Shown here: piece by piece, positions 1,188 to 38,319 of the stretch
Numbering within the stretch: the stretch's first letter is position 1
Layout: the number at the start of each line of letters is the position of its first letter
Virus record (IMG/VR): IMGVR_UViG_3300042391_000634
Coordinates: 248,001-312,000 of that record
Strand: one strand, 5' to 3'
Length of the DNA stretch: 64,000 bases
Program-made: the position numbers and the translations under genes
The notes under the pieces: generated by a model
Told to the model about the DNA's origin: nothing
Seen by the model: the letters and a program-made list of their open reading frames with translations, nothing else
Database searches by the model: none

Positions 1188-1964
1188 ATGCCATTAGATT
1201 TAACAGGAAATAAATTAAATAGTACTTCAATAGGCCCCAAAGGTGAAGTTTTAAAACAAATCTCATCTGATGGTCTGATATTTCATGTTGATGCTGCAAA
1301 TAAAAATTCTTATTTAGGTTCGGGGTCAACATGGGTTGATTTAAGTGGTAACAATAATAATGGTACATTATATAACTCACCAACCTTTGCTTCAAATGAT
1401 GCAATTGGTAATTTAGCATTTAATGGATCAAATCAATACATGCAAGCAAATATCTCATCAACACTATTAAATGGTGATCCAAATTTTACAATTGAAATGT
1501 TTGTAAAAAGAACAGCAACATTAGTCGGTACGGCAGGTGCTTATTGGGGATTGGGACAAGGAGGAACACAAGGATTTGCAGTACAAGGATGGACACCTAC
1601 AGATAATAGAATACATATGGATTTATGGGATTCATCAAGAGTTGATACTCAACAAGATTATCCATTAAACACTTGGGTTCATATTGTTTGGTCTAAAATA
1701 GGTACGGGTATTAGTCCTAGTACGGTTAATTGTTTTATAAATGGTGTTGCGGCAAGTTGTATATCAGGTAGAGAACAAACATCAGGACCAAACTATCCAA
1801 CATCGACCGCAGGTAATGGTATTGCAATTGGAAGAATTGCCGGTAATTACGATGGATACTATGGACAAATGAAAATGGGTGTTTTTAGAGTGTACACAAG
1901 AGGTATATCATTAAAAGAAGCGGCACAAAATTTTAATAGTCAAAAATCAAGGTTTGGTTTATAG
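1188..1964 (+). CDS. LamG/concanavalin A-like domain protein
   Basis: 'GLIFHVDAANKNSY.GSGSTWVDLSGNNNNGTL..P' N-terminus typical of phage LamG proteins; 'RVYTRGIS..E..QNFN'. Confidence 0.8.
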   Translation: MPLDLTGNKLNSTSIGPKGEVLKQISSDGLIFHVDAANKNSYLGSGSTWVDLSGNNNNGTLYNSPTFASNDAIGNLAFNGSNQYMQANISSTLLNGDPNFTIEMFVKRTATLVGTAGAYWGLGQGGTQGFAVQGWTPTDNRIHMDLWDSSRVDTQQDYPLNTWVHIVWSKIGTGISPSTVNCFINGVAASCISGREQTSGPNYPTSTAGNGIAIGRIAGNYDGYYGQMKMGVFRVYTRGISLKEAAQNFNSQKSRFGL

Positions 1965-1988: not shown

Positions 1989-2720
1989 ATGATTACCAAT
2001 CAAGATTTCATAACAGGAAATATCACAACAAATGCTGGTGACTCAGTCCCTTATAGATGGACACACGGTGCAACGACAGAACATATGGGTGATGGTCTTA
2101 TTGTCTATTCACTGATACAACATATGAGAGCAAAAACGTGTGTCTGTATCGGGTCGGGAGGTGGGTTTATACCCCGTATTATGACACAAGCAAGATTGGA
2201 TTTACACAAACAAGGAATATTTGAAGGTAATCCAGATATTAATTGGGGAGACATTGGTGTAACATATATCGTTGACGCATGTAACGGTATTGGAGGTCCA
2301 AATGATTTAGAGGATGAAAACTCATACTATCACAAACAATTCCAACCACGATTAATTAAATCAACATCAGAAGATGCCTACTATAATTTCTTTGTTCTAC
2401 AAGATATAAAGATAGATGTTTTATTTATTGATGGTGATCACTCATATGATGGAGTTAAGTTGGATTTTGATTTGTATTCAAATATTTTATCAGATAAAGG
2501 AATTATTATTATACACGATACCGATCCAAATTACGAGGAAAATCTATTAATATCGGAAGATTCAAAAAAAGACCATCACAGATTCGACGGACCATCAAAA
2601 TTAGTTAAAGAATTAGAAAAAAACCCATCATATAATTTGATTAATTTATATAATTTTCATATATTACCTAATAAACCATCATCAAGTGGTATAACGGTAA
2701 TTAATAAGAAAAATGGTTAA
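1989..2720 (+). CDS. Class I SAM-dependent methyltransferase (Methyltransf_24-like)
   Basis: 'CIGSGGG' motif I; 'IDVLFIDGDHSYDGVKLDF..Y...L...GIIIIHD'. Confidence 0.8.
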   Translation: MITNQDFITGNITTNAGDSVPYRWTHGATTEHMGDGLIVYSLIQHMRAKTCVCIGSGGGFIPRIMTQARLDLHKQGIFEGNPDINWGDIGVTYIVDACNGIGGPNDLEDENSYYHKQFQPRLIKSTSEDAYYNFFVLQDIKIDVLFIDGDHSYDGVKLDFDLYSNILSDKGIIIIHDTDPNYEENLLISEDSKKDHHRFDGPSKLVKELEKNPSYNLINLYNFHILPNKPSSSGITVINKKNG

Positions 2721-3570
2721 ATTATTAACAGTCATAGGTCACGGAACAAATTTACTTTCACATTTCATTGAACATTATCAAAAACATGTTGATGAAATTA
2801 ATATTGCTGTTTATGAAACAGAATTACATCCAAATTTAACAGAAGAAATTAATGAAGTAATTAAAAACTACGAAAAAGTTAATGTTGTTATAACCGTTCA
2901 AGAAAGAGTATTTGATTGGGAAAAAGTAACACAACTTTATAATTTTGTTAAATCAAAACGAAAAGATAGTTGGTATGTTATTGCCGATATTGATGAATTT
3001 CATTTATATCCTAATGACGATTTACATAAATTAATATACGACTGCCAAGAAAATAATTGGGACATTGTAAGAGGTGGTTTTATTGATAGAATTGGTAGAG
3101 GAGGTGAATTTAGTGAATTAGTTAACGATGTATCTATATGGGAACAATTCCCAAATGCGGGGTTCTTTAGATATCCAATGAGTAAAGCATGTCCAAATAA
3201 GATTTGTATTATGAAAGGATATGTTGATGTGACGGCAGGACAACATTATGCTAAAATTAATGACCACACAACATGGAGATGGCAAGGGTGGAGCCATCCA
3301 TTGATTGCACCAATCAAAACACACTCAGTACAAGTTCATCACTTCAAATGGGATTCAACATCAATAGATAGAGTATCAGATGTTGCAAACCTAAATGAAG
3401 ATTATGCGTTTTCAAGTGAATATTTTCAAATGTATAAAGAATTAAAGAAGACAAATTTTAAAATAGATTTATTAAATCCTGATTTTATGTTTGAATTAGG
3501 ATTAAATAAACCCGAATATAACCGTTATAAAAATTGGAATAAATTAATTAAAAAAATCATATCAATATGA
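2713..3570 (+). CDS. GT-A fold glycosyltransferase (GT2-like)
   Basis: 'FIEHY', 'WYVIADIDEF' DxD motif, 'HHFKW'. Confidence 0.7.
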   Translation: MVKLLTVIGHGTNLLSHFIEHYQKHVDEINIAVYETELHPNLTEEINEVIKNYEKVNVVITVQERVFDWEKVTQLYNFVKSKRKDSWYVIADIDEFHLYPNDDLHKLIYDCQENNWDIVRGGFIDRIGRGGEFSELVNDVSIWEQFPNAGFFRYPMSKACPNKICIMKGYVDVTAGQHYAKINDHTTWRWQGWSHPLIAPIKTHSVQVHHFKWDSTSIDRVSDVANLNEDYAFSSEYFQMYKELKKTNFKIDLLNPDFMFELGLNKPEYNRYKNWNKLIKKIISI

Positions 3571-3821
3571 CAAAGGAAGAAAAAGATAAAATTGAACTTG
3601 AACTTGAAACACGTAAAATCAAGGCATTAGAAAAAATTGCAAATTCATTAGATGCACTAACTGTGTGGTTTGAGGAAATAGATAAAGATGAATGGGGAAA
3701 TAGGGTCCAATATTATTTAGCTGAATTTCATAATAAAATAGTGAAAGAAATTCCATTTAAAGAAGAAGAGGAAGAAGAAATTAAAACTGACGATAAGAAA
3801 GTAAAGAAAAATGCGAAATAA
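3567..3821 (+). CDS. Hypothetical charged protein
   Basis: 84 aa ORF overlapping both neighbours. Confidence 0.5.
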   Translation: MTKEEKDKIELELETRKIKALEKIANSLDALTVWFEEIDKDEWGNRVQYYLAEFHNKIVKEIPFKEEEEEEIKTDDKKVKKNAK

Positions 3822-5226
3822 AAAAATCGGAGTAGTTGTTCCATTTAGAAATAGATACGACCAACTTGACATTTTTAAAGAGAGAATTACAAAATATCTT
3901 AGTGAAAAGAACATTTCATATGAAATTATCATAGTTGAACAAGATGATGCTAAATTGTTCAATAGAGGAATGTTATTGAATATAGGATTTACTTATGCTG
4001 AGAAACTTAAATGTAAGTATGTTGTTTTTCATGATATAGATATGTTACCGATTGATGTAGATTATGGTTATAGTACCACCCCATTACATTTGGCCACTAA
4101 TTTCTTAAACAATGAAAGGGAATTATTCGATACCTATTTTGGTGGAGTTACAATGTTTAATGTTAAAGATTTTAAAAAAATAAATGGGTATTCAAACAAA
4201 TATTGGGGTTGGGGATATGAAGATGATGATTTACTTTTAAGATGTGTCGTTAATGATTTAGATTTAGATACATTAATTTTAAAAAACGTAGGAACAAATG
4301 GAACGGCATTAAAATTTAACGGTAACGATGCGTATGTTAAAGGAATTAATAATTTTAATTTAAATAATAATATTACATTTTTTATTTCATTTTATCCTGA
4401 TAATATTAAATGTAATTATATTGACGATTCGGATCAATATAATATATTCACAATACCTGGTTATGACTTCGCCATATCATATAATTCATTTTCAAGATAT
4501 AATTTCTGTACGTTTGATGAAAATAATAACGTATTATATGTTAATTCTAAAATAAAGAAAAATTATAAAACAAACATTTCAATAACAATTAACAATACCG
4601 AAAAAATAATTAAAGTTTATCAAGATGGGGAATTAATTGGTAAAATTGAATCATTTGAGAAACTTCATCAATATAAAAAGCAACCATTTTTTTATATTGG
4701 AACAAGTGACCCAAATAATGAGTTAAATCCTAAATATTTTAAGGGATATTTTGATTCTTTGGCGGTGTATGATACTGTTTTAGAGGATGATGAAATATTA
4801 GAAATTTCACAAAATAAGTATAGAGGATTATTACAAAATTTTGGAAATTATAACTCTGCTGACCTTATTAAATTATATTATGACACTAAGATAATAAAAG
4901 GTTATAAATTAAAAGATTTATCAGGAAATAATAATGATGGTGAAATCATTAATTGTGAAATTACAGACTTAATAGTAGATAGTATATACGAATTATATGT
5001 TCCACATAGGAGAAAATCTCTATTTGAAAGTTTACCTCACGAAGAAAATGGATTTTTAGATAACAAATGGAAAGATCAATCTACTAGATGGAATCAACTA
5101 CGATTTATAAATGAAGTATCTACAAATCACGAATTATTATATAACGATGGATTATCAGATTTAAATTTTGCAGAACACGGAATAACAAACGAAAATAACA
5201 TAACATTTGTAACAGTTGGAATATGA
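3811..5226 (+). CDS. GT7 (beta-1,4-galactosyltransferase-like) with inserted LamG domain
   Basis: 'VPFRNR','FNRGMLLNIG','FHDIDMLP','YFGGV','NGYSNKYWGWGYEDDD'; LamG segment about 4291-4960; GT7 tail 'H..N..RF..DGLSDL'. Confidence 0.85.
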   Translation: MRNKKIGVVVPFRNRYDQLDIFKERITKYLSEKNISYEIIIVEQDDAKLFNRGMLLNIGFTYAEKLKCKYVVFHDIDMLPIDVDYGYSTTPLHLATNFLNNERELFDTYFGGVTMFNVKDFKKINGYSNKYWGWGYEDDDLLLRCVVNDLDLDTLILKNVGTNGTALKFNGNDAYVKGINNFNLNNNITFFISFYPDNIKCNYIDDSDQYNIFTIPGYDFAISYNSFSRYNFCTFDENNNVLYVNSKIKKNYKTNISITINNTEKIIKVYQDGELIGKIESFEKLHQYKKQPFFYIGTSDPNNELNPKYFKGYFDSLAVYDTVLEDDEILEISQNKYRGLLQNFGNYNSADLIKLYYDTKIIKGYKLKDLSGNNNDGEIINCEITDLIVDSIYELYVPHRRKSLFESLPHEENGFLDNKWKDQSTRWNQLRFINEVSTNHELLYNDGLSDLNFAEHGITNENNITFVTVGI

Positions 5227-6656
5227 GTCATAAATTAGGTATTTGTATACCGTACAGAAATAGAAAGGAACACATTGAGAATTTGATACCACATTTATCA
5301 AAATATTTAAATGAAAAAGGAATAGAACATAAATTTTATGTTGGACATCAAGTTGATGATAAATTATTTAATAGAGGTGCAACAAAAAACATTGCAGCAC
5401 ATTATGCGTTTGAAGATGGTTGTGATTATGTAGCTTGGCACGACGTGGATATGTTAGCAATTGATAAAGATAATTTAATTTGTGATTACTCCTATCCTGA
5501 AAAATCACCAATTCACATTGCAACCAAATTATCAAAATATAACTACACACTAGGGTATGATCAATACTTTGGAGGTGTTGTTTTATTTACCAAAGAACAA
5601 GCGTATCAAACCAATGGTTATTCAAACGAATATTGGGATTGGGGTCAAGAAGATGATGATCTTTTTTGGAGGTGTTATTTTGAGGGTTATAAAGATGGTA
5701 AGATTTTTAAATCACATAAAGAAAAATCGGTTGTAAATTTTAATGGAGACGATTCATTAGTGGTTATACCAACAAACGAAAAGATAAGTAAATGTTTATC
5801 TGGTAATCATACTATTTCTGTATTATTTAAAGCAGAACAACAACAAGAGAAAGTGCCTATTTGGTTGGTTGGTGACAAAGAAAAGAAATTTATTGAATAC
5901 CCAATATTAAGAAAACACGAATCTTGGACATGGGGGTTATCCTTTAATAATTCAAGGACGGTTAACATGACAGTTTTTGATAAAAACGAAAATTATCATA
6001 ATAATTGGGTTAAGAAATTTGAAAATGAATGGACGTGGGTAACAGTTTCATTTGATAATAAAACAAAAGAAATGTATTTCTTTGTTAACAATGAATTGGT
6101 TACTAACGTAAACGATGTTAAAGAGAATAAACCATTCATGGTCGGAGAAAACCTTAAAAAACATGATAACACCAATCCATTTATATTAGGGTTTTGTAGT
6201 AATCAAAAAACATATTTTAAAGGTCAAATTGCTGAAGTTAAAATATATGACAAGTGTTATAAAAATATAAAAACGTCGATTAGTAAAGAAAAAAGTTTAG
6301 TTTTACATATGGATTTTGAGAATGGTTATTTAGATATAATAAATAACATAATATGTGAAAATCTTAATACTGAAATTACTAAAGAAAATATTGAAGTTAT
6401 TGATAATATAATCCCAATAAGAAGAGAAGGTAATTTTAATTGTATGTTCCATGAAGATGAAGGATTTATTAATGGTGAATGGAAAAAGGGAGAGACGACG
6501 GCAAGAAATGAAAAAAGATTTGTTACTGAAATGCAACAAAAGAAGATAGATTATAAAGAAGACGGATTAAATAAAATATTAGAAGTATTGGATATTATTA
6601 ATGTTGATGAAACAATATACCCAAATACAATGTTTATAAATGTTAAAACAAAATAG
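5223..6656 (+). CDS. GT7 paralog with inserted LamG domain
   Basis: 'IPYRNR','FNRGATKN','WHDVDML','YFGGV','NGYSNEYWDWGQEDDD'; LamG segment about 5730-6360; tail 'RNEKRF..DGLN'. Confidence 0.85.
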   Translation: MSHKLGICIPYRNRKEHIENLIPHLSKYLNEKGIEHKFYVGHQVDDKLFNRGATKNIAAHYAFEDGCDYVAWHDVDMLAIDKDNLICDYSYPEKSPIHIATKLSKYNYTLGYDQYFGGVVLFTKEQAYQTNGYSNEYWDWGQEDDDLFWRCYFEGYKDGKIFKSHKEKSVVNFNGDDSLVVIPTNEKISKCLSGNHTISVLFKAEQQQEKVPIWLVGDKEKKFIEYPILRKHESWTWGLSFNNSRTVNMTVFDKNENYHNNWVKKFENEWTWVTVSFDNKTKEMYFFVNNELVTNVNDVKENKPFMVGENLKKHDNTNPFILGFCSNQKTYFKGQIAEVKIYDKCYKNIKTSISKEKSLVLHMDFENGYLDIINNIICENLNTEITKENIEVIDNIIPIRREGNFNCMFHEDEGFINGEWKKGETTARNEKRFVTEMQQKKIDYKEDGLNKILEVLDIINVDETIYPNTMFINVKTK

Positions 6657-6657
6657 A

Positions 6658-9462
6658 ATGTTTTTAGAATACGAAAAACCATGGTTATTAGAGTTACCAA
6701 ATATTAATAGCGATAAAATAAATCCATTATTAACGGAAAGCACAACGTTAACAATAGAATTTAAAGTAGATAAATTTCACGATGATAGTGAAAAAATTGG
6801 ATTCTTTGGGATGCCAGGTAAAAACTTTGGTATTAGTTACGATTTTGAGGTCGAGACATTTGTATTTGAATTTTGGACAAAGGGAAATAAAGGAAAAGAC
6901 ACTTTTCATTGTTACAAAGATTTTCATATTAATAGAAACGACATTGAAAATGGTATAGTGTTTACTTTAATATATGATAAAGAAAATTTAAAGTTTGAGT
7001 TATATCATAATTTTTATTTATTTTTTGAAATTGAATTAGACGGTCCATTATTTGAAGATTACTTAACCCAACCGTTATATATGGGTTGCCACAATCCCGA
7101 TGCTGACAATGAAAGACATAGATGTTTTACTGAAATGGACGTACTTCATTTTAGTATTTTTAATGGAGTAAATGATATACTTGAAATTGAAAAATTCTAT
7201 AACAATAGTAAAATAAAAAACGATAATTTATCATGTTATTTTGATTTTAAGGAAAAATATTTAGTTCATAAAGAAGATATGGAATATAATATTATCCAAA
7301 ATCAAAAAGACAAACTTATCAAGATTTCATTAAGTGATTTAAATAGTAGTGTTGCTGACAGAATTAAACATAAGAAAATAAGGGTGCCGGGTTTAAAGAT
7401 AGAACACCAAAAACCTTTTATCTTAAAAACAAAAGAATTACAAAACATATTAACCAATAAAAGTTATTCACTTAACATTACTTTTAAAGTTGAAAGACAA
7501 TATACTCAAGATCAAAAAATAGGATTCTTTGGTATACCAGGTAAAAACTTCGGTATTAGTTTTGACTATGAAGTGGAAAAATTTGTTTTTGAATATTGGA
7601 CACAAAAAAATGAAACAGACACCCAATTTCATTGTCATAAAGATTATAAGATAAATCAAAATAATTTACATAATGGTTTAACGATTTCAATTATATATGA
7701 AAAAAATTCATATTTTGAATTATACCACAATTATAATTTAATTGATAGAATTGAAGTAACCGATGATTTATTATTTGATTATGATTTACAACCTTTATAT
7801 TTCGGTTGCCACAATCCAAGCTCTTTATTGGAAAGTCATAGATGTTTTACTGAAATGGAATTAAATCATTTTAGTGTTTATGAGGGGGTTATGGACATTA
7901 AAGACATTGAAAAAAATATTAAATCCGATAACCTATTAACACATTTTAATTTTAAAAGGACTGAAGACAATGAGATTTTTGATAGTATTAATAAAGAAGC
8001 CTCAATTGAAATGGTAGATCTTTTATCGTTCAAAAAAATGGTCGATTTTAATCAAATGAAAGATAAGTTAAATAAAGTCGGTTGTGGATTTTGTTTAGCT
8101 AAATGGACACAAGTAACAATGCACTTACATAATGGTACAACACATAGTTGTCACCATCCTGAACCACACAAGATAGGTTTAGATGAGATTAAAAGAAATC
8201 CAACATCGTTACATAATAGTGTAGTTAAAAAACAAGCAAGAAAAGAAATGTTAGAAGGTAAACGACCTTCAGAATGTCAATATTGTTGGAATGTTGAAGA
8301 TAATTCAGATTCTTTTTCTGATAGATTTTTTAAATCATCAGAACCGTGGTCTGAACCTTATTTTGATGAGATTGCTAATTCACATTGGAGAGATAACTAT
8401 AATCCAAAATATGCTGAAGTTAGTTTTTCTAATACGTGTAATTTTAAATGTGCGTATTGTGGTCCCGAATATTCTTCTAAGTGGATGGAAGAAATAAATG
8501 AATACGGTGGATATAGTTTAGAGACACACGAATATAATGGGACAAAAAGAATGGAGGATAGAGGAACTAAACCATATAGACAAACCGAAGAAAATCCATA
8601 CGTCGAGGCGTTTTGGCAATGGTTCCCTGAATTATACTCAACGTTAGATACTTTTAGAATAACAGGAGGAGAACCTTTACTATCTAAAGACACATGGAAA
8701 GTATTGGATTATATTATCGAATCTGAAACACCTAATAAAGAATTAAAATTATCAATCAATAGTAATTTGGGGGTTAACGATGAATTGATAGATAGATTAA
8801 TATTGAAACTTGAAAAAATAATATCAGAAGATAGAGTCAAAGAAGTTGTAATATTCACATCATGTGAGGGTTACGGTAAACAAGCCGAATACACAAGATT
8901 TGGATTAGAATTTGATAGATTATTTTCAAACATTGATAAGATATTAACAGTATTAGATAAAGTAACAATTGTTGTAATGTCAACCTTCAATGTGTTCAGT
9001 ATATTCTCTTATGAGAAATTAATTAAAAAGATATACGAATATAAAATTAAACATTTCAACACTAAGAGGTATTGGAACTCAGCAATAATTTTAGACACAT
9101 CATATCTTCGTCACCCATCTTTTATGACATTTAGAATATTAAAAGATTATATAGATGTTGAATATTTTAATAGGTGGATTAAATACATGAAGTTTAACTC
9201 AACATACAGAAGTCTAAATTTCTATGAACAACAAACAATTGAAGACGTAGGATTCTCAACACAAGAAATAGAAAAGATTGTAAGATTAAGAGATATATTT
9301 GTAACAGACTACGAAACTGAAATGAGTTTATTTGATGATAATAAAAAAGATTTCTTGAAATTCATAAAAGAATATGAAGTAAGAAGAGGTATGAACTGCC
9401 AAGAATACTATCCTGAATTAACTAACTTTATTAAAAAAATAGAAAATGACAATAAATTATAG
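6658..9462 (+). CDS. Radical SAM protein (N-terminal twitch type) fused to two LamG-like repeats
   Basis: Two repeats 'KIGFFG.PGKNFGIS.D.EVE.FVFE.WT'; 'CGFCLAKW..HSCHH','CQYCW'; CNFKCAYC; 'ITGGEP'. Start moved to ATG 6658 after upstream stop. Confidence 0.85.
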   Translation: MFLEYEKPWLLELPNINSDKINPLLTESTTLTIEFKVDKFHDDSEKIGFFGMPGKNFGISYDFEVETFVFEFWTKGNKGKDTFHCYKDFHINRNDIENGIVFTLIYDKENLKFELYHNFYLFFEIELDGPLFEDYLTQPLYMGCHNPDADNERHRCFTEMDVLHFSIFNGVNDILEIEKFYNNSKIKNDNLSCYFDFKEKYLVHKEDMEYNIIQNQKDKLIKISLSDLNSSVADRIKHKKIRVPGLKIEHQKPFILKTKELQNILTNKSYSLNITFKVERQYTQDQKIGFFGIPGKNFGISFDYEVEKFVFEYWTQKNETDTQFHCHKDYKINQNNLHNGLTISIIYEKNSYFELYHNYNLIDRIEVTDDLLFDYDLQPLYFGCHNPSSLLESHRCFTEMELNHFSVYEGVMDIKDIEKNIKSDNLLTHFNFKRTEDNEIFDSINKEASIEMVDLLSFKKMVDFNQMKDKLNKVGCGFCLAKWTQVTMHLHNGTTHSCHHPEPHKIGLDEIKRNPTSLHNSVVKKQARKEMLEGKRPSECQYCWNVEDNSDSFSDRFFKSSEPWSEPYFDEIANSHWRDNYNPKYAEVSFSNTCNFKCAYCGPEYSSKWMEEINEYGGYSLETHEYNGTKRMEDRGTKPYRQTEENPYVEAFWQWFPELYSTLDTFRITGGEPLLSKDTWKVLDYIIESETPNKELKLSINSNLGVNDELIDRLILKLEKIISEDRVKEVVIFTSCEGYGKQAEYTRFGLEFDRLFSNIDKILTVLDKVTIVVMSTFNVFSIFSYEKLIKKIYEYKIKHFNTKRYWNSAIILDTSYLRHPSFMTFRILKDYIDVEYFNRWIKYMKFNSTYRSLNFYEQQTIEDVGFSTQEIEKIVRLRDIFVTDYETEMSLFDDNKKDFLKFIKEYEVRRGMNCQEYYPELTNFIKKIENDNKL

Positions 9463-10183
9463 AGAACCGTATTGGTTAAAGTTTCAATGGGACTTATCTA
9501 CACATCATGAAAATCAATATGTAACTGAATTCAATAAATCTGAAAATCTATCATTAACTGATTTTTTTTACAACGAAAATTTTATTATTACATGTAATTT
9601 TAAAATAGAAGATAACTATGAGGGTGAGGATGTTCGTATGATATTTGGTAAATCAGGTAAAAATATGGGATTAAGGTATAATAAACCACAAAGGGAGTTG
9701 TGTTTTGAATTTTGGACGACTACTGAATCTGAAGATTGTTATAATAATGTTTTATTTCCATCGGTAACTAAAGAAGATATTGAAAAAGGAATAACTGTTA
9801 GTGTTATTAGAGATGAAAACAGAATAACCGTTTATAAAAATTTTGTTGAGGATAATCATATTGATTTTGACAATGAGTTTGTTAATGATTATAAAAGACC
9901 TGGTTTATTTATCGGTTGTTGCAGTCCAAGTCCACATCCAAACACATTCGGAGGTTTTACTAAAATAGAAATGAATCATTTTTCATTAATAAGTAAAACT
10001 TCAAACATTAAAGATTCTAAAAGTATATATGAAAAGGAAACCGATGTGATTTTAAAAAATAGATTTTATGATGATATCGTCTGTTTATATGACTTTAAAA
10101 CAGTTAATAATTTAGGTATAGTATACGATGAATCTAAAAATAGTAATTTCTTAGAAAAGGTACCAAAAGAATTTATTATATAA
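9446..10183 (+). CDS. Stand-alone copy of the LamG-like repeat domain
   Basis: 'IFGKSGKNMGL.Y','FEFWT','LFIGCCSP','EMNHFS','CLYDFK' match the repeats of the 6658 ORF. Confidence 0.65.
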   Translation: MTINYREPYWLKFQWDLSTHHENQYVTEFNKSENLSLTDFFYNENFIITCNFKIEDNYEGEDVRMIFGKSGKNMGLRYNKPQRELCFEFWTTTESEDCYNNVLFPSVTKEDIEKGITVSVIRDENRITVYKNFVEDNHIDFDNEFVNDYKRPGLFIGCCSPSPHPNTFGGFTKIEMNHFSLISKTSNIKDSKSIYEKETDVILKNRFYDDIVCLYDFKTVNNLGIVYDESKNSNFLEKVPKEFII

Positions 10184-10228
10184 TTTCATATGTCAATAAT
10201 AAAGTTTATATTATAAAAAAACACCAAT

Positions 10229-11683
10229 ATGTCAGAACACTTAAGTGATTGGAGAGATGAACATTTAAATAAAGTAAGTTGTAGTTTTTGTGCGGCTAAA
10301 TGGTTAAACGTAAGTTTACATTTAGGTCATGGATTTACAAATTCATGTCACCTACCATTACCACATCCAATAGATGTTGAAGCAATTAAAACCAACCCTG
10401 CGGCATTACATAATACCGATTTCAAAAAAGAAATTCGTAAAATGATGTTAGAGGGTATTAAACCGGCAGAATGTTCTTACTGTTGGAAGATTGAGGATAT
10501 CGGTAGAAATAATATTTCTGATAGGGTATATAAGAGTCAAATATATAGTCCTGAAGATATTGCGGCGTTAAAGGAATTACCTTGGGATGCAGATATTATA
10601 CCTCAAACTATGGAGGTTAGTTTTGATAGAACATGTAATTTTGCATGTTCATATTGTAATTCAGGATACTCAACAACATGGGGTAAAGATATTAGAGATA
10701 ACGGACCATATCAAAATTTTAAAACCACAAGTGCAGGTGCCTATTACGCAGATGGTTCTTGGTCGGAGATTTATGGTAAATACAATGAAAACAATCCGTA
10801 TGTGGATGCTTTCTTAAAATGGTGGCCTGAATTGTCACAAAAATTAATGGAAATACGTATAACTGGTGGGGAACCATCACAGTCACGTAATTTTTGGCAG
10901 TTTATGGATGTAATGAAACAATACCCATCCCCTAATTTACGACTTGCAGTCAATTCTAACCTAGGTCTTAACGAAACGACTATGAATAGGTTAATTAGTA
11001 TATCTCACGAATTAGATATCAAAGAATTCGATTTATATACAAGTTGTGAAGCTTATGGTGAGCAAGCGGAATATATTAGAGATGGATTAAATTATGAACT
11101 ATGGAGAAGTAATTTAGTTAAAGTAATTGAGAGCGCTAAAATTAGACAAGTTGTTATCATGATGACAATTAATAGTTTGTGTTTATTTAGTATTACCGAA
11201 TTTTTAGATGATATGTTGAAATTAAAAGAAAAATACGGAACACATAAACCAGTTGTAGATTTTAACATATTAAGATGGCCAGCATTTATGTCACCGCTTA
11301 CATTACCGGATGATGTAAAACATGATTTACATGGTAAGTTATCAATGTGGTGGAGAAAACATAAAAAGAATCCATTAATTAATATGAATGAAGGTGCACA
11401 AATCCAAAGATTAATTGATTATATCGAAGTTGTTAATAGAGGTCATAACACAAGTGAAATGGATATGTCGATGCAATATCACGATTTTAAAAGTTTCTAT
11501 GTTCAATATGATATTCGTAGAAATAAGAATTTTGTAAAAACATTCCCTGAATTGGAAGATTGGTATAATTCATTAGTAATTGATAATACAATTCCATATG
11601 TGGCAATGACTGATGGTAGAATAACTCATTTTGAGCCAGGTGTATATGTTTCAGATAAAGAAAATTATAACAAACCAATTTAA
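10229..11683 (+). CDS. Radical SAM protein (N-terminal twitch type)
   Basis: 'CSFCAAKW..NSCH','CSYCW', CNFACSYC, 'ITGGEP'; paralog of the 6658 C-terminal half. Confidence 0.85.
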   Translation: MSEHLSDWRDEHLNKVSCSFCAAKWLNVSLHLGHGFTNSCHLPLPHPIDVEAIKTNPAALHNTDFKKEIRKMMLEGIKPAECSYCWKIEDIGRNNISDRVYKSQIYSPEDIAALKELPWDADIIPQTMEVSFDRTCNFACSYCNSGYSTTWGKDIRDNGPYQNFKTTSAGAYYADGSWSEIYGKYNENNPYVDAFLKWWPELSQKLMEIRITGGEPSQSRNFWQFMDVMKQYPSPNLRLAVNSNLGLNETTMNRLISISHELDIKEFDLYTSCEAYGEQAEYIRDGLNYELWRSNLVKVIESAKIRQVVIMMTINSLCLFSITEFLDDMLKLKEKYGTHKPVVDFNILRWPAFMSPLTLPDDVKHDLHGKLSMWWRKHKKNPLINMNEGAQIQRLIDYIEVVNRGHNTSEMDMSMQYHDFKSFYVQYDIRRNKNFVKTFPELEDWYNSLVIDNTIPYVAMTDGRITHFEPGVYVSDKENYNKPI

Positions 11684-11685
11684 TA

Positions 11686-12984
11686 ATGGATTTTTTATTT
11701 GAGGACACAGAAAAGTTAGCGAATTTCACATCATGTAATGATATTAATCCATCTGGCATTGGTAGGTTTGGTATTTCGGCATTATTAACTGCAACACAGA
11801 TATATGTTCAAGCGCATGACAAACATAGTGAATTACAATATTATCCTGCGAGCGATGAAAAAAACGGATACATTATACCAGTTTCGGTAAATCATAGTCC
11901 CGATGATTGGACAGGTCATAACCCAAGAGTTAAAAGTTTCTTTTTTCATCTTAATGAAAAATACTTAAAAGATTTAAGAGATAAAAAAGCATTCTTAATG
12001 TTAGATCAAAGTTTAGAAGGTTATCAAACGTCATGGTTGTGGGATTATTTCCATAAACAATGTCAAGAATGGGATGTATCACCAAAACGTATTATATATG
12101 TGACAGGAAATATGATTGCAGATGTGGTTTATGATAAATGGTGTGAAGATAATAATATAATTGAAAAATTAAAGGTTATACCATATCCACATTTTGAATT
12201 AGATATGGGTATGACTTGTTATGGCCGATCTAAAGGTGAGAAAGCACATCCGTTACCGACATTTCAAGATCATATTAATTATAAACTTACACATCCTGAA
12301 AAATTAAAATCGTTTGCGTGTTTAAATAAAAGAATTAGACCACAGAGAGTTTGGTTTTACAATTATCTTTATCATTCTGGTTTATTAAAAGACGGATTAG
12401 TTAGTATGAATGATTTTCCAAAACATTGGTATCAATGGGAAGGGAAACACATGGAAGAAGAATTATTGAATGAAATTACTAAAGGACTACCTTTATTAGT
12501 TTATGAAAAACCTAATAATGAATTAGATGATAGTTTCTACATTAATCGTTTTAATGATGATATTTGTTTGGATACATTTGTTACAGTCATTAGTGAAGCA
12601 CATTGTGGTGATAGTGACCAAACAATGTTCTTAAGTGAAAAAACATTTAAAGTATTAGCTTGTAGACATCCATATATGATAATGGGTAATAAAGATAGTC
12701 TTAATATGATGAGAAAAATTGGTTATAAGACTTTTGATGGTTTTATAGATGAAGGGTATGATACATTACCAACACATGAGAGACTTCAATATCTAATCGA
12801 ATCAATTAGAAAGGTGGTTAACATAAAAGACAAAATTGAATGGTTTAAATCAATGGAAGACACAATTGAATATAACTATAGTGCGTTGATTGAGAAATTA
12901 TTTAGATTTCCAGATGCATATTTGGAAATGAAAAGATATTGTAAAGAAGAAACAAATAAACTAAAACATAAATCATTAATATAA
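11686..12984 (+). CDS. Putative GT-B glycosyltransferase, GT10-like paralog 1
   Basis: 'CLNKRIRPQR','VISE..FLSEKTFK...HPYMIMG','FIDEGYD'. Confidence 0.5.
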   Translation: MDFLFEDTEKLANFTSCNDINPSGIGRFGISALLTATQIYVQAHDKHSELQYYPASDEKNGYIIPVSVNHSPDDWTGHNPRVKSFFFHLNEKYLKDLRDKKAFLMLDQSLEGYQTSWLWDYFHKQCQEWDVSPKRIIYVTGNMIADVVYDKWCEDNNIIEKLKVIPYPHFELDMGMTCYGRSKGEKAHPLPTFQDHINYKLTHPEKLKSFACLNKRIRPQRVWFYNYLYHSGLLKDGLVSMNDFPKHWYQWEGKHMEEELLNEITKGLPLLVYEKPNNELDDSFYINRFNDDICLDTFVTVISEAHCGDSDQTMFLSEKTFKVLACRHPYMIMGNKDSLNMMRKIGYKTFDGFIDEGYDTLPTHERLQYLIESIRKVVNIKDKIEWFKSMEDTIEYNYSALIEKLFRFPDAYLEMKRYCKEETNKLKHKSLI

Positions 12985-13417: not shown

Positions 13418-13444
13418 AAAAAGGGACATTAAGTCCCTTTTTTT
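13418..13444. terminator. Bidirectional intrinsic terminator
   Basis: AAAAAGGGAC-attaa-GTCCCTTTTT between convergent genes. Confidence 0.85.
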
Positions 13445-13991
13445 ATGATTCGTAATATAACTCAGGATATTCAACTATAACATGAATACCACCTTCAGTA
13501 TAAGCGTTTTTATAAATTGATTCAATCTCTGAATAATTTTTTAAATCCCAAAATTTAGTATTGGGACATATAGATTTAAATTCTTCAAAATAATTACCTC
13601 TATGTTGGTGACCCGGATCTAATGGTTTATCAGAACCTTTACCTAAACGAACAATCATATTAGGTTTCCATTTACCTTGACTCATTAACCCAATTTTATC
13701 AACATGATTTACCAATTGATTTGTTGCACATATTACAAAATCCCAACGAGGGTAGAATGTAATAACAAATTTACCGGCCATTGCCATTCCTAATGACATA
13801 CCCATTTGAGATTCTTCCATAACGGGAAGTTCAATTAATTTATCTTTAGGAACTTCACCTATTGTGGTACTCATAGGATTACCGTGCCAAAGGACTTGTT
13901 GACCTATAAAAACGGTATCTTCCTGTTGACCAAGGTAAGTCATTGAATTAGTTAGTGCGTCCTTGTACGGGGTGTATTGTGGTGAACTCAT
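13443..13991 (-). CDS. TPP enzyme beta subunit (pyrimidine-binding domain only; PDH E1-beta/transketolase-like)
   Basis: 'VFIGQ','ELPVMEESQMGMSLGMAMAG','NQLVN','GHQH','VIVEY'; ATG 13991 overlaps upstream TGA. Confidence 0.8.
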   Translation of the reverse strand: MSSPQYTPYKDALTNSMTYLGQQEDTVFIGQQVLWHGNPMSTTIGEVPKDKLIELPVMEESQMGMSLGMAMAGKFVITFYPRWDFVICATNQLVNHVDKIGLMSQGKWKPNMIVRLGKGSDKPLDPGHQHRGNYFEEFKSICPNTKFWDLKNYSEIESIYKNAYTEGGIHVIVEYPELYYES

Positions 13992-14821
13992 ATTAAATCT
14001 TTTTCTATTCTTTTTATTATGTTTTGTGCAAATATTTGATGACATTCTTTTGACGGGTGGTGATCCAACGGAGGTGTATTTGTGAAGTTATTAAAGTCAC
14101 TTTTAATTTCCATATTACCATGTCTCCTCTGTAAATTTTCTATTGTCTCAAACGGTTCCCCATTATATTCAATGTTAATAAATTTACTATAAAGATATTC
14201 ATCTTTTTTAATTCTACTAAGTAATTCGTCCGTCCAAGCAAATATAATTGGTTTTATACCTTTTTCTTCATAAAACATTAATTTTTCCTTCAATCTTTCA
14301 ACTTGTAAATCTTTATGTAATTCAAACCATTCATCAACAGACATATTATTTTGTTCCATCCATATAAATAAATTTTCAATGTTGTATCCAAAATTTATCT
14401 TGTTATCACCACCAACCCAAGCACCACAGAATTGTTTTTTACCATTCAAAGTAAACCAAAATTTATTTCTCGAAACTTGACTTAATTGAATTATAATATA
14501 ATCAATATCTTCATATGAATATTTTTCATATGATAAATGTTCTTGACCTTTTGTGTTACGGTCAAAAATAGTGTTAAAAAAATCAAACGTTTCATCTTCA
14601 GAACCACCATTAAGATTTTTTACAACTTCAAATGTATTAAAATGATTCGCAATCAATCTTGGATGACGAATTGTATCTTTAAATTTTAAATGTGCGTCAG
14701 TTAAATGATGTCTTTCATATGTTGTTTCATTTGGGGGATAAACTAAACCAGGTAAATCCGAATAGAAATATAACCCCTGACCCCATGTAAATGAACAACC
14801 CCCAAATAGTAATCCTTTCAT
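13988..14821 (-). CDS. SGNH-like hydrolase/acyltransferase family protein
   Basis: 'GGCSFTWGQG','GGS','DHHPSKECH'. Confidence 0.6.
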   Translation of the reverse strand: MKGLLFGGCSFTWGQGLYFYSDLPGLVYPPNETTYERHHLTDAHLKFKDTIRHPRLIANHFNTFEVVKNLNGGSEDETFDFFNTIFDRNTKGQEHLSYEKYSYEDIDYIIIQLSQVSRNKFWFTLNGKKQFCGAWVGGDNKINFGYNIENLFIWMEQNNMSVDEWFELHKDLQVERLKEKLMFYEEKGIKPIIFAWTDELLSRIKKDEYLYSKFINIEYNGEPFETIENLQRRHGNMEIKSDFNNFTNTPPLDHHPSKECHQIFAQNIIKRIEKDLI

Positions 14822-28668: not shown

Positions 28669-30336
28669 ATGTATATAATAGGAATTTCAGCATTTTATCA
28701 CGATTCATCTGTTTGTTTATTCAGAGATAACCAATTAATATTTGCATGTGAAGAAGAGAAGTTCACAGGTATTAAACATGATGATTCGTTTCCAAAAAAA
28801 GCGTTGGAATATATCTACAAACAATATAAGATAACACCAAAGAATTTACAGGCGGTTTGTTATTATGAAGACCCACAATTGAAATATCAAAGAGTAATGG
28901 AAAACATTAAACCTCAATGGTTTAAGAATCCATTATATTCATTAAAATCTTATTTGAAAATACGTAATAATGTAAAAGAGATTGATAAGAAATTAAAGGA
29001 GATTTGTTCCACCGTATTTTATTCAACACATCACGAGGCTCATCAATATTATGCACATTATACATCACATTTTGAGGAGTCAACTTGTTTATCGGTTGAT
29101 GGTGTAGGTGAGATTGATACCGTATCATTAGGTGTTGCCGATTATAATGGAATCAAATACAGTTCACTTGCAAAGTATCCACATTCAATGGGTCTTTATT
29201 ACTCCGCATTAACCTCATATTTAGGGTTCAGACCAAACGAAGGAGAGTATAAGGTAATGGGATTAGCGTCCTATGGTGACCCCCAAAAGTATATTAAAGA
29301 GGTAAGAAACCTTATATCATTTAAATCAGGTAAGTTAGTATGTAATATGGATGTATTTTGTTGGAATAAGACAGATAAATCCATGTTCAATGAAAAACTT
29401 GCGGAACTATTAAGTGTTCCACAAAGATTACCCGAAGAAACTTTAGAACAAACACACAAAGATTTAGCGGCCGCTGTTCAATTAAGATATGAGGAAGTAT
29501 TGTTTGAAATTATTAAATCAATTAGACATGTAAGTAAAAGTCTAAACTTAACGTTGAGTGGTGGTTGTGCTTATAACGGAACCGCAAATGGTAAGATTAT
29601 TGATAAGACACACTTTACACATCTTTGGATACCACCCGCACCATCAGATGCAGGATCAGCAATCGGTGCTGTTGTTCATTATTTAGTTAAAGAACGTAAA
29701 GTAAGGAGTAAAATTACAAGAAGTCCATTTTTGGGTCCTGAATATTATTACGATTATATTAGACGTGCAATTGGTATGAACAACTTTAAAAAATATGAAT
29801 CTGAAAATAAATTAAGAACCCATATTGCTCAAAAAATATTTGAAGGTAAAGTAGTTGGGTGGTTTCAAGGACACATTGAATTTGGATCTCGAGCGTTAGG
29901 TAATAGATCTATTTTAGCTAATCCAACGTTTCCCGATATGAAAGATAGAATCAATAAGGTAATTAAAAAGAGAGAAGGTTTTAGACCATTCGCACCAATG
30001 GTTACTCAAGATAAACAACATCAATTCTTTGAAATGACGGATGATGTTCCATATATGAATCAAGTTGTTAAAGTTAAGGATGAATATAGAGACAAATTAC
30101 CGGCGGTAACACATGTAGACGGTAGTGCTAGAGTTCAAACAGTTTATAAACACACAATGATACATGATTTATTAATCGAATTTGAAAAATTAAGTGGTTA
30201 TCCAATTTTATTGAATACCTCATTCAATGTTAAAGATAAAACAATGGTATTAACACCAAAAGATGCCGTTGATACTTTCTTTGATACTGATATGGATATA
30301 TTAGTAATGGGTAATTATGTTATGTATAAAAATTAA
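28669..30336 (+). CDS. O-carbamoyltransferase (NodU/CmcH family)
   Basis: 'GISAFYHDS','EEE.F..IKH','HH.AH','DGVGE','EYKVMGLA.YG','EFGSRALGNRSILA','FRPFAP','HVDGSARVQTV','LNTSFN'. Confidence 0.95.
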   Translation: MYIIGISAFYHDSSVCLFRDNQLIFACEEEKFTGIKHDDSFPKKALEYIYKQYKITPKNLQAVCYYEDPQLKYQRVMENIKPQWFKNPLYSLKSYLKIRNNVKEIDKKLKEICSTVFYSTHHEAHQYYAHYTSHFEESTCLSVDGVGEIDTVSLGVADYNGIKYSSLAKYPHSMGLYYSALTSYLGFRPNEGEYKVMGLASYGDPQKYIKEVRNLISFKSGKLVCNMDVFCWNKTDKSMFNEKLAELLSVPQRLPEETLEQTHKDLAAAVQLRYEEVLFEIIKSIRHVSKSLNLTLSGGCAYNGTANGKIIDKTHFTHLWIPPAPSDAGSAIGAVVHYLVKERKVRSKITRSPFLGPEYYYDYIRRAIGMNNFKKYESENKLRTHIAQKIFEGKVVGWFQGHIEFGSRALGNRSILANPTFPDMKDRINKVIKKREGFRPFAPMVTQDKQHQFFEMTDDVPYMNQVVKVKDEYRDKLPAVTHVDGSARVQTVYKHTMIHDLLIEFEKLSGYPILLNTSFNVKDKTMVLTPKDAVDTFFDTDMDILVMGNYVMYKN

Positions 30337-30339
30337 AAT

Positions 30340-30456
30340 ATGAAAAAACTAATCAATTGGGTGAAGAAATACTTTGCCGACAAGAAAAGAAAGAAAGAAT
30401 TTAAAAAGAAATTAGAAGAATTACGTAAAAGAGATCCATTTATCTATAACCACTAA
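30340..30456 (+). CDS. Small basic protein (38 aa) ending DPFIYNH; not in ORF track
   Basis: MKKLINWVKKYFADKKRKKEFKKKLEELRKRDPFIYNH; fills the gap between neighbours exactly. Confidence 0.7.
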   Translation: MKKLINWVKKYFADKKRKKEFKKKLEELRKRDPFIYNH

Positions 30457-30459
30457 TCT

Positions 30460-37266: not shown

Positions 37267-38319
37267 ATGAACAATCAAGTTGAGTTAAAGAATTATTTTT
37301 GTAGTGTACCATTTACATCATTAGAAATACATAATAATGTTTGTTTTGTTTGTTGTCCATCTTGGTTACCAAACAAAGTGGAACTTAGTGAAATTCCTTT
37401 AAAAGATGTTTACAATAGTGAACCAATTATAGATATTAGAAATTCTATTTTAGACGGTTCGTTTAAATATTGTAGTAAAGAGCTTTGTCCTTATTTAAGT
37501 AAATTAGTAAACTTTGGAGTAACATCAGGACCCGTTACATTAAAATCACATTCAAATATTAATAGCCCTATTATAGAAAATAATACACCGAATGATTTAA
37601 TAATGAATTTTGACAGGACTTGTAATTACAAATGTCCATCATGTAGAGTAGATTTAATTGTTGAAAATAGTGAAGGAATACAAAGAGTTGAAAAAACAAT
37701 TGAAGATATTGACACATATTATTCAAAATATGTAAAAACTTTGTATATAACAGGATCAGGCGACCCATTTGTTTCAGTTGGATTTAGAAATTATCTAAGA
37801 AATTTTAATCCTAAAAAATACCCAAATTTATCATCAATACATTTTCACACCAACGCATCTATGTGGAATAAAGAAATGTGGGATAGTATGCCAAATGTAC
37901 ATAAATATGTTCATACGTGTGAAATTAGTATAGATGCCGGCACCAAAGATACTTACGAAAATAAAACGAGATTAGGTGGTAATTGGGAAAACTTATTAAA
38001 TAATTTAAAATTTATTAGCACTTTACCACATATGAATGTAAAAACGTCATTTGTTGTTCAAGATACAAATTATACTGAAATGGAAACCTTTTATAATTTA
38101 ATGTATTCTATATTTGGCAAAAGAGTAAATGTATTTTTTGGTAAGATAACTAATTGGGGAACATTTTCTGACGGTGAATTTAAATTAAAACAGGTATGGG
38201 ATACCGAACATCCAGAACACATGTTATTTAAAAAAGAATTTAATAAAATATGGAAAAATCAAAACCTTTTTCATAACTTATATGAATTCATAGACAATAC
38301 ACATACATCGTTGATATGA
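37267..38319 (+). CDS. Radical SAM protein with N-terminal SPASM/twitch-like Cys cluster
   Basis: 'CSVPF','VCCPSW','C...CP'; CNYKCPSC; 'GSGDPF','TNA','ISIDA'. Confidence 0.85.
   Translation: MNNQVELKNYFCSVPFTSLEIHNNVCFVCCPSWLPNKVELSEIPLKDVYNSEPIIDIRNSILDGSFKYCSKELCPYLSKLVNFGVTSGPVTLKSHSNINSPIIENNTPNDLIMNFDRTCNYKCPSCRVDLIVENSEGIQRVEKTIEDIDTYYSKYVKTLYITGSGDPFVSVGFRNYLRNFNPKKYPNLSSIHFHTNASMWNKEMWDSMPNVHKYVHTCEISIDAGTKDTYENKTRLGGNWENLLNNLKFISTLPHMNVKTSFVVQDTNYTEMETFYNLMYSIFGKRVNVFFGKITNWGTFSDGEFKLKQVWDTEHPEHMLFKKEFNKIWKNQNLFHNLYEFIDNTHTSLI

What the first reader, a model, noticed from the sequence alone, without database searches (positions are those of the whole stretch)
6658..11683. Radical SAM pair equipped with a triplicated LamG-like domain
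Seen: one radical SAM carries two N-terminal copies of a ~230-aa domain. A third copy is a free gene (9446) directly before a second, unfused radical SAM paralog. Inference: the fused-versus-split pattern implies the domain is a functional partner, probably a glycan-binding substrate recruiter. This would make these radical SAMs glycan- or glycoprotein-modifying enzymes (for example BtrN-like sugar dehydrogenases) of unknown chemistry.
Basis: partly seen in the sequence, partly recalled or inferred. Interest (0 to 1): 0.62.

Follow-up and report, generated by a model that had tools for sequence, protein, structure and literature searches.

The report
Phage radical SAM enzymes with LamG modules
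A 335-kb tailed jumbo phage carries two uncharacterised radical SAM enzymes inside a very large sugar-building gene island, and they have acquired fast-evolving lectin-fold (LamG-like) modules that most likely steer them to their target, though neither the target nor the chemistry is known.

Summary
ORF 6640/6658-9462 holds two ~235-aa repeats (50% identical) followed by a radical SAM domain. ORF 9446-10183 is a third, free copy (27% identical). ORF 10229-11683 is an unfused radical SAM paralog. An AlphaFold model of the free copy (pLDDT 86.7) is a ConA-like/LamG jelly roll (Z 17.4). Its nearest predicted-structure neighbours are the LamG_3 modules of the two adjacent GT7 glycosyltransferases.

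Both enzymes belong to NCBIfam NF033640, an uncharacterised family with an N-terminal twitch domain. Both keep the CX3CX2C motif and four auxiliary-cluster cysteines. They are not detectably BtrN-like.

The window is a glycan and protein-modification island of a tailed jumbo phage, next to collagen-like tail-fibre genes. The same two radical SAM types co-occur in bacterial MAG loci without any LamG module. In the phages, the LamG modules diverge two to three times faster than the catalytic domains, and the fused copy number is 1, 2 or 4. This fits a lineage-specific targeting module, not a catalytic subunit.

The free copy's constant neighbour is the upstream fused enzyme (overlapping stop and start), not the downstream one. 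Glycan binding, physical interaction and substrate remain untested. The co-fold gave no answer.

The parts
6658..9462 (+). Fusion protein: two LamG-like modules followed by a type-B N-terminal-twitch radical SAM. The longest ORF starts at 6640; homologues start at the Met equivalent to 6658.
6658..7374 (+). LamG-like repeat 1. It arose by a tandem duplication specific to this lineage and L007.
   Evidence: 50% identical to repeat 2. Relatives carry a single copy.
7375..8079 (+). LamG-like repeat 2
8089..9429 (+). Type-B radical SAM domain: N-terminal twitch-like Cys4 region, CX3CX2C motif and GGEP motif
   Evidence: NF033640, 306 bits against a cut-off of 170. Cysteine columns are conserved. 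It falls in a clade with LamG-less bacterial paralogs.
9446..10183 (+). Free-standing LamG-like protein (245 aa). Its start overlaps the stop of the fusion gene by 17 nt.
   Evidence: AF2 model pLDDT 86.7. Fold matches.
10229..11683 (+). Type-A N-terminal-twitch radical SAM (484 aa), unfused. It is the most conserved protein of the block.
   Evidence: NF033640, 297 bits. 80-85% identical across more than 100 clusters. AF2 pLDDT 89.5.
3811..5226 (+). GT7 (beta4GalT-like) glycosyltransferase with a C-terminal LamG_3 module
   Evidence: The LamG-like family profile hits its LamG part at E 3e-10. Structural neighbour, TM 0.73-0.75.
5223..6656 (+). Second GT7 glycosyltransferase with a C-terminal LamG_3 module
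1989..3570 (+). Methyltransferase (1989-2720) and GT2-like gene (2713-3570) that open the conserved block
1188..1964 (+). Free LamG_3 protein. It is one of five tandem paralogs; the others lie at genome positions 245428-248574, which includes window 2-574.
11686..12984 (+). GT10 (fucosyltransferase)-like protein directly after the type-A radical SAM. Paralogs lie at 17442-18680(-), 18673-19884(-) and 22881-24155(+).
   Evidence: Paralogy. The GT10 label is only a weak lead (Atlas score 0.79). No Pfam or PDB hit.
37267..38319 (+). Third, very divergent N-twitch-like radical SAM (350 aa). It lacks the fourth auxiliary cysteine.
28669..30336 (+). NodU/CmcH-type carbamoyltransferase. Its homologues also lie near type-A radical SAM genes in Ralstonia phage RsoM2USA and in MAG locus L012.

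Best explanation
Two paralogous radical SAM enzymes of the uncharacterised N-terminal-twitch family (NF033640; type B is fused, type A is free) act as tailoring enzymes in the phage's large glycoconjugate-building island. Each should bind a SAM-cleaving [4Fe-4S] cluster (CX3CX2C) and a fully Cys4-ligated auxiliary cluster. This suits hydrogen abstraction followed by electron transfer, that is oxidation or epimerisation-type chemistry, on a sugar residue.

In this phage clade the enzymes acquired ConA-like/LamG modules of the same stock as those on the adjacent GT7 glycosyltransferases. There are one to four copies fused to the N-terminus of type B, plus one separate gene that is translationally coupled to type B and lies before type A.

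These modules are not part of the catalytic machinery. They are lineage-specific, fast-evolving, copy-number-variable targeting modules that hold the enzymes on a repetitive or polymeric acceptor. That acceptor is the glycan chain or a glycosylated fibre protein.

Shown here: anatomy, fold, family membership, conservation pattern and gene context. Inferred: binding, the nature of the acceptor and the chemistry.
For: - Fold: VIA Z 17.4 to the PAPP-A LG domain, 17.1 to BACOVA_03559, 12-15 to pentraxins, CBM40 and laminin LG. Foldseek probability is 1.00.
- Nearest predicted-structure clusters are the 931-aa radical SAM fusions, viral GT7+LamG_3 fusions (TM 0.73-0.75) and free viral LamG_3 proteins (TM 0.78). 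The sequence profile links the repeat to the GT7 LamG_3 module at E 3e-10.
- Family membership and cysteines.
- The block MTase, GT2, GT7+LamG x2, LamG-rSAM, LamG, rSAM is conserved in jumbo-phage contigs of up to 333 kb.
- Domain-wise identity to L008/L009: radical SAM domains 75-83%, their LamG-like modules 39-53%, GT7 catalytic domains 59-86%, GT7 LamG modules 50-78%.
- Fused copy number is 1 in about 100 clusters, 2 in 13 clusters and 4 in P0288.
- Type A and type B each cluster with LamG-less paralogs from Bdellovibrionota and other MAG loci where A and B co-occur.
- Glycan context in the phage. Glycan context in MAG loci: sugar epimerase, GT4, PMT_2, carbamoyltransferase, nucleotidyltransferase.
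- Collagen-like tail-fibre genes flank the island.
Against: - No binding of any kind was tested. The co-fold of 9446 with 10229 gave no answer, which counts neither way.
- Pfam Laminin_G_3 does not hit the repeat. A profile-profile comparison with the five free LamG_3 paralogs is not significant.
- ConA-like folds also mediate protein-protein contacts, as in PAPP-A, neurexins and pentraxins, or are purely structural, as in dimethylformamidase. The fold therefore does not imply sugar binding.
- No member of NF033640 has a known substrate.
- In the only cultured phage with a homologue (RsoM2USA), the type-A gene sits with DUF6071 and carbamoyltransferase genes among DNA replication genes, not glycosyltransferases.
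Confidence: 0.5

Rival explanations
1. The radical SAM enzymes modify a protein rather than a sugar, for example residues of the collagen-like fibres or of the free LamG_3 proteins. The LamG-like modules would then be protein-recognition domains.
For: - Collagen-like tail-fibre genes flank the island.
- The island also holds an Asp/Asn hydroxylase, P4H-type 2OG oxygenases and TibC-like GT9 enzymes, all of which are protein-modifying families.
- The best structural neighbours of the radical SAM model include the peptide-modifying enzymes SkfB, SuiB, anSME and EpeE.
- The top LamG match (PAPP-A LG) is a protein-binding module.
Against: - Structural matches are generic, all at Z 11-14, and include the sugar or nucleoside enzymes BlsE and DesII.
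- The immediate operon partners are glycosyltransferases and a methyltransferase.
- Bacterial loci carry sugar-nucleotide enzymes, and no precursor-peptide genes were noticed.
Confidence: 0.2
2. The enzymes act on soluble small molecules (NDP-sugars, nucleotides or a DNA base modification). The LamG-like modules would serve only to assemble or scaffold a multi-enzyme complex.
For: - The RsoM2USA homologue lies among replication genes together with a carbamoyltransferase.
- Bacterial homologues work without LamG.
- Several LamG-bearing enzymes are encoded side by side.
Against: - Rapid divergence and 1/2/4 copy-number variation of the modules are unusual for a fixed scaffold interface.
- No interaction was supported (uninformative).
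Confidence: 0.15
3. The free LamG-like gene (9446) has nothing to do with the radical SAM enzymes. It would be one more member of the island's LamG expansion, for example a virion lectin or fibre accessory, that happens to lie between them.
For: - Five other free LamG_3 genes lie nearby and resemble C-terminal parts of virion structural proteins.
- Its downstream neighbour varies between lineages.
Against: - It belongs to the same narrow family as the fused copies, not to the free LamG_3 set.
- It directly follows a type-B radical SAM with overlapping stop and start in every locus where the upstream gene is visible.
Confidence: 0.1

Closest known systems
NCBIfam NF033640 (N_Twi_rSAM, twitch domain-containing radical SAM protein)
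   Same: Both radical SAM domains score far above the curated cut-off (306 and 297 bits against 170). Both have the family's N-terminal Cys-rich domain plus CX3CX2C.
   Different: The family has no characterised member (no paper found). The model does not include LamG-like modules, and bacterial members lack them.
BtrN (twitch-domain radical SAM dehydrogenase of butirosin biosynthesis)
   Same: Both combine a radical SAM core with one auxiliary [4Fe-4S] domain of twitch type. Both have a carbohydrate-pathway context. A fully Cys-ligated auxiliary cluster is compatible with two-electron oxidation (review PMC9012708).
   Different: SPASM and twitch domains are C-terminal extensions (PMC9012708), whereas here the domain is N-terminal. 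There is no sequence hit to any PDB chain. BtrN is not among the 50 best structural matches. BtrN has no lectin-fold module and acts on a small aminocyclitol.
Viral GT7 + Laminin_G_3 glycosyltransferases (the neighbouring genes 3811-6656)
   Same: A catalytic domain is joined to the same kind of LamG module (TM 0.73-0.75; HMM E 3e-10). In both, the module evolves faster than the catalytic domain. By analogy from general knowledge, the lectin domains of ppGalNAc-transferases guide the enzyme to an already glycosylated acceptor.
   Different: The module is C-terminal on the glycosyltransferases and N-terminal, in 1-4 copies or free, with the radical SAM. The catalytic chemistry is different.
PAPP-A LG domain, BACOVA_03559, pentraxins, CBM40 (nearest solved folds)
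   Same: The ConA-like jelly roll aligns over about 160-190 residues at Z 13-17.
   Different: Sequence identity is 8-13%. Ligands range from proteins to sialic acid, so they give no guide to the ligand here.
Virus-encoded virion glycosylation systems (Mimivirus fibril glycosylation, mycobacteriophage virion glycosylation; recalled from general knowledge, not tested here)
   Same: A virus encodes its own large set of sugar-nucleotide enzymes and glycosyltransferases next to fibre genes.
   Different: It was not shown here that the product ends up on the virion. Radical SAM enzymes with lectin-fold modules are not, to my knowledge, part of those systems.

Membership tests
Radical SAM superfamily | CX3CX2C cluster motif and SAM-binding GGE motif; match to PF04055 | tested here: met
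   C136/C140/C143 and G213-G214-E215-P216 (numbering of the 484-aa protein) are invariant or nearly so in 32 family members. PF04055 scores 33.2 bits for the fusion, above the 29.5 cut-off, but only 18.8 bits for the free enzyme. The AF2 model matches radical SAM cores at Z 11-14.
NF033640 N_Twi_rSAM | Full-length match above the curated cut-off (170 bits) | tested here: met
   306.3 bits (aa 484-930 of the fusion) and 296.6 bits (aa 18-446 of the free enzyme). The third gene, 37267-38319, reaches only about 50 bits, which is not met.
NF033640 N_Twi_rSAM | Auxiliary-cluster (twitch-like) cysteines located N-terminal to the radical SAM motif | tested here: met
   C21, C40 and C82 are present in 32/32 aligned members and C85 in 31/32. 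All lie upstream of C136. Actual Fe-S binding is not testable with these tools.
LamG / ConA-like lectin fold | Jelly-roll beta-sandwich superimposable on LamG, pentraxin and CBM structures | tested here: met
   Model pLDDT 86.7, pTM 0.88. Z 17.4 with 188 residues aligned at rmsd 2.7 to PAPP-A LG; 70 chains at Z of 8 or more, nearly all of this fold.
Pfam PF13385 Laminin_G_3 | Sequence match to the family HMM at gathering score | tested here: not met
   No hit at E up to 1 for the three copies. The genome search with PF13385 lists only the upstream genes. The relationship shows only through the repeat's own profile (E 3e-10 to one GT7 LamG_3) and through structure.
Carbohydrate-binding module / lectin (functional sense) | Demonstrated or residue-level predicted sugar binding | not testable with these tools
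BtrN-like sugar dehydrogenases | C-terminal twitch domain; detectable similarity to BtrN | tested here: not met
   The auxiliary domain is N-terminal. No PDB sequence hit at E up to 1. BtrN is absent from both structural hit lists.
Obligate two-subunit enzyme (LamG-like protein + radical SAM) | Physical interaction between the product of 9446 and a radical SAM enzyme | tested here: inconclusive
   The predicted complex of 10229 with 9446 scored 0.00, with the verdict 'no answer'. Pairing with the fused enzyme was not tested.

The most novel reading that the evidence does not exclude
These are lectin-guided radical SAM enzymes that carry out radical chemistry, such as epimerisation or oxidation, on sugar residues of an already assembled glycan or glycoprotein fibre. 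The tandem LamG modules would supply avidity and specificity for the polymer. This would be a polymer-level radical glycan-editing system, so far seen only in a clade of uncultured jumbo phages.
Probability: 0.2. Interest if true: 0.75.

Novelty: new variant of a known kind. Interest (0 to 1): 0.5.

Why it matters
NF033640 is a large, mostly phage-borne radical SAM family (thousands of relatives; nearest Atlas clusters 91-100% viral) with no known substrate. Here, and in about 115 related protein clusters, it is tied to a lectin-fold module and embedded in a glycosyltransferase operon. This gives the family its first concrete, testable functional context. It also points to jumbo phages that build elaborate glycoconjugates using radical chemistry, next to collagen-like fibre genes. 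If the modules do target a polymer, the architecture would be a new way of directing radical SAM enzymes.

Tried and rejected
- Co-fold of 10229 (type A) with 9446, using my own alignments: score 0.00, verdict 'no answer'. This is not evidence either way.
- megablast of the region and tblastn of 9446 against cultured phages found nothing. tblastn of 10229 found only Ralstonia phage RsoM2USA, where all neighbours are annotated as hypothetical.
- Literature searches for the family name, accession or 'N-terminal twitch' returned no relevant paper.
- phmmer of 10229 against PDB found nothing.
- A profile of the GT10-like paralogs against PDB gave only chance hits.
- hhalign of the LamG-like family against the five free LamG_3 paralogs was not significant: probability 1.9%.
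- The reading 'LamG + rSAM split copy of the fusion' was considered and downgraded. The radical SAM duplication (A versus B) predates the phage-bacteria split, and the free LamG gene tracks type B, not type A.
- The Rfam SNORD36 hit was rejected as chance: 30.1 bits against a cut-off of 30, E 0.97.
Full report
**Setting.** The window is bases 248001-312000 of a 335,630-bp IMG/VR virus record that CheckV rates as complete. GC content is about 30%. It is a tailed phage. Four collagen-like tail-fibre proteins of 893-1631 aa lie just upstream of the window, and another lies at window 46170-48197. The nearest Atlas clusters for the radical SAM enzymes are 91-100% viral, mostly Uroviricota.

**The observation.** ORF 6640-9462 is 940 aa.
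- It consists of two repeats of about 235 aa (50% identical over 197 aa, E 1e-64) followed by a radical SAM domain.
- ORF 9446-10183 (245 aa) is a third copy, 27% identical to either repeat (E about 1e-18).
- ORF 10229-11683 (484 aa) is a second radical SAM enzyme, 35% identical to the radical SAM part of the fusion.
- An HMM of the repeat finds only these three copies in the genome.

**The repeat is a LamG/ConA-like jelly roll.**
- Pfam and NCBIfam do not recognise it.
- An exhaustive profile search of 1.84 billion representatives found only 40 clusters. It is a narrow family.
- An AlphaFold2 model of the free copy, built on a 15-sequence alignment, has pLDDT 86.7 and pTM 0.88.
- VIA-align gives Z 17.4 to the PAPP-A LG domain (188 residues, rmsd 2.7) and Z 17.1 to the putative carbohydrate-binding protein BACOVA_03559. 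Pentraxins, CBM40 sialic-acid modules, laminin and neurexin LG domains and clostridial neurotoxin Hc-N domains score Z 11-15. Foldseek agrees.
- Among ESM Atlas models, the nearest neighbours after its own family are the 931-aa radical SAM fusions (TM 0.77), viral GT7+Laminin_G_3 glycosyltransferases (TM 0.73-0.75) and free viral LamG_3 proteins of about 244 aa (TM 0.78).
- The family profile also hits the LamG_3 part of the neighbouring GT7 enzyme at E 3e-10. A profile-profile comparison with the five free LamG_3 paralogs is not significant.

The three copies are therefore a divergent branch of a larger local expansion. Five free LamG_3 genes (genome 245428-249964) and two GT7+LamG_3 fusions (window 3811-6656) sit directly upstream. 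Every LamG_3 hit in the genome lies in this one stretch.

**The radical SAM enzymes.**
- Both belong to NCBIfam NF033640, 'twitch domain-containing radical SAM protein' (306 and 297 bits; cut-off 170).
- In a 32-member alignment, the radical SAM cysteines C136/C140/C143 and the GGEP motif are conserved. So are four N-terminal cysteines: C21, C40 and C82 in 32/32 and C85 in 31/32. This predicts a fully Cys-ligated auxiliary cluster placed N-terminal to the core.
- SPASM and twitch domains are normally C-terminal extensions, and the fully ligated cluster of BtrN is thought to accept an electron during two-electron oxidation (PMC9012708).
- The AF2 model of the free enzyme (pLDDT 89.5) matches many radical SAM cores at similar strength: BlsE Z 13.7, SkfB 13.4, MoaA 12.6, SuiB 12.3, viperin 11.7, anSME 11.7, DesII 11.5. 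BtrN is not listed.
- There is no sequence hit in PDB, and no paper on the family was found.

Family membership is clear. The chemistry is unknown, and 'BtrN-like' is not specifically supported.

**Comparative anatomy.**
- The gene order is conserved in related jumbo-phage contigs (L007-L010, up to 333 kb) and in short metagenome contigs (L005, L006): methyltransferase, GT2-like, small ORF, GT7+LamG, GT7+LamG, LamG-like-radical SAM, free LamG-like, radical SAM.
- Most relatives carry one N-terminal module (about 698 aa, roughly 100 clusters). Thirteen clusters carry two, and one protein (P0288, 1397 aa) carries four.
- The window's two copies are each other's best match. They arose by duplication in the lineage shared with L007.
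- All 116 long proteins found with the module are of fusion length, and nearly all carry a precomputed PF04055 hit.

**Rates of divergence.** Identity between the window and L008/L009:

| Domain | Identity |
|---|---|
| Radical SAM domains | 75-83% |
| Their LamG-like modules | 39-53% |
| GT7 catalytic domains | 59-86% |
| GT7 LamG modules | 50-78% |

The type-A enzyme is the most conserved protein of the block: more than 100 clusters at 80-85% identity. The free module is the least conserved (43-56% on the same contigs).

**Origin of the pairing.**
- A maximum-likelihood tree places the fused enzyme's radical SAM domain (type B) and the free enzyme (type A) in separate, well-supported clades.
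- Each clade also contains paralogs from Bdellovibrionota and other MAG loci. There, A and B co-occur, often in tandem arrays of four to seven family members, with no LamG-like domain.
- Two of these loci are genuine bacterial chromosome, with Obg, iPGM and a PPDK-like gene.
- The A/B duplication is therefore older than the association with LamG. The modules are a phage-lineage addition, not a required subunit.

**Which enzyme does the free copy serve?**
- In the window its start overlaps the stop of the fusion gene by 17 nt, whereas 45 nt separate it from the type-A gene.
- The same overlap with the type-B gene recurs in L005-L009 (17 nt), L022 (4 nt) and L025 (1 nt).
- In the more distant L022 and L025, the gene after the free LamG-like copy is not a type-A radical SAM. 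In L022 it is a homologue of the window's GT10-like paralog family. In L025, and after the still more distant relative in L024, the downstream ORF resembles that family only by motif.
- The constant partner is therefore the upstream type-B enzyme.

**Context.** Nearly the whole window encodes glycan or protein-modification functions:
- SDR epimerase/dehydratases, one of them fused to a 2OG oxygenase
- an RmlC-like epimerase and a UDP-glucose dehydrogenase
- split transketolase-like genes
- GDSL-type enzymes
- a NodU-type carbamoyltransferase and an APS kinase
- an Asp/Asn hydroxylase and a P4H-type oxygenase
- GT2, GT4-like, GT7, GT9/TibC-like and GT10-like transferases

MAG loci with family members carry a sugar epimerase, a carbamoyltransferase fragment, GT4, a PMT_2 transferase and a nucleotidyltransferase. 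One counter-example exists. In Ralstonia phage RsoM2USA the type-A homologue (47% identical) lies with three DUF6071 genes and a carbamoyltransferase among replication genes.

**Interpretation.** The best-supported reading (confidence about 0.5) has three parts:
1. The two enzymes tailor a sugar-containing product of the island.
2. The LamG-like modules, like those on the adjacent GT7 enzymes, are targeting or acceptor-recognition modules.
3. The target is polymeric or repetitive.

Four lines of evidence support the targeting role: the modules are absent from bacterial homologues, they diverge fast, their copy number is 1, 2 or 4 (tandem binding modules raise avidity; general knowledge), and they are homologous to the glycosyltransferase-borne modules.

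Whether the ligand is a glycan or a protein such as the collagen-like fibres is open. The interaction test was uninformative. Rivals are protein modification (0.2), small-molecule chemistry with scaffolding modules (0.15) and an unrelated free LamG gene (0.1).

**Novelty.** The radical SAM family and the fold are both known. Joining them is, as far as I could find, undescribed, and so is the 1/2/4-copy variation and the accompanying free copy in a jumbo-phage glycan island. I rate this a new variant of a known kind, with moderate interest (0.5).

Noticed in passing
genome 245428-249964 (window -2572 to 1964; L021): Five tandem paralogous free LamG_3 proteins of 233-258 aa, 24-35% identical to each other. 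They lie directly after the tail-fibre genes and resemble C-terminal parts of PHROG 'virion structural proteins'. A 198-aa Cys/Gly-rich ORF (window 587-1183) is interposed.
   Followed up: partly
genome 226505-245424 (L020) and window 46170-48197: A battery of collagen-like tail-fibre proteins (893, 1631, 1200 and 1241 aa, with shared internal repeats) flanks the glycan island. The fibre gene inside the window lies in a stretch of raised GC (0.38 against about 0.29).
   Followed up: partly
L012, L013, L015, L018, L019 (MAG contigs): Tandem arrays of four to seven NF033640 radical SAM paralogs in Bdellovibrionota and other MAG loci. They fall into at least four conserved paralog clades. This suggests a multi-step radical pathway of unknown product.
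   Followed up: partly
window 14823-17435 (-): An 870-aa fusion of an SDR epimerase/dehydratase, a 2OG-Fe(II) oxygenase and a second SDR. In the 97-99% identical contig L007 the same region is two genes (547 + 326 aa). This is either a recent fusion or fission, or a sequencing difference.
   Followed up: no
window 13443-14045 (-) and 19845-20477 (-): Transketolase-like halves (pyrimidine-binding and TPP-binding) are encoded about 6 kb apart. The SDR fusion and two GT10-like paralogs lie between them. This may indicate two-carbon branched-sugar chemistry.
   Followed up: no
window 37267-38319 (+): A third, very divergent N-twitch-like radical SAM (350 aa; NF033640 at only about 50 bits). Leu replaces the fourth auxiliary cysteine. 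It lies between a GDSL-like gene and a GT9/TibC-like gene.
   Followed up: partly
window 38337-39467 and 43982-46105 (+): GT9 heptosyltransferase-like proteins. The first has a TibC N-terminal domain, which hints at protein O-heptosylation. An Asp/Asn hydroxylase (34403-34996) and a P4H-type oxygenase (35010-35591) are nearby.
   Followed up: no
window 28669-31194; L004 (RsoM2USA 125-129 kb); L012 47-439: A NodU-type carbamoyltransferase and DUF6071 proteins recur near type-A radical SAM genes in three unrelated contexts. In RsoM2USA the trio sits among DNA replication genes.
   Followed up: partly
protein P0288 (metagenome, 47-kb contig): A 1397-aa relative with four tandem LamG-like modules in front of the radical SAM domain.
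   Followed up: partly
window 31215-31649 (+): A short (144-aa) APS-kinase-like protein, which suggests that sulfation is part of the island's chemistry.
   Followed up: no
window 50467-50540 (-): An Rfam SNORD36 match exactly at the gathering score (30.1 against 30, E 0.97). It is almost certainly chance in a phage genome.
   Followed up: no
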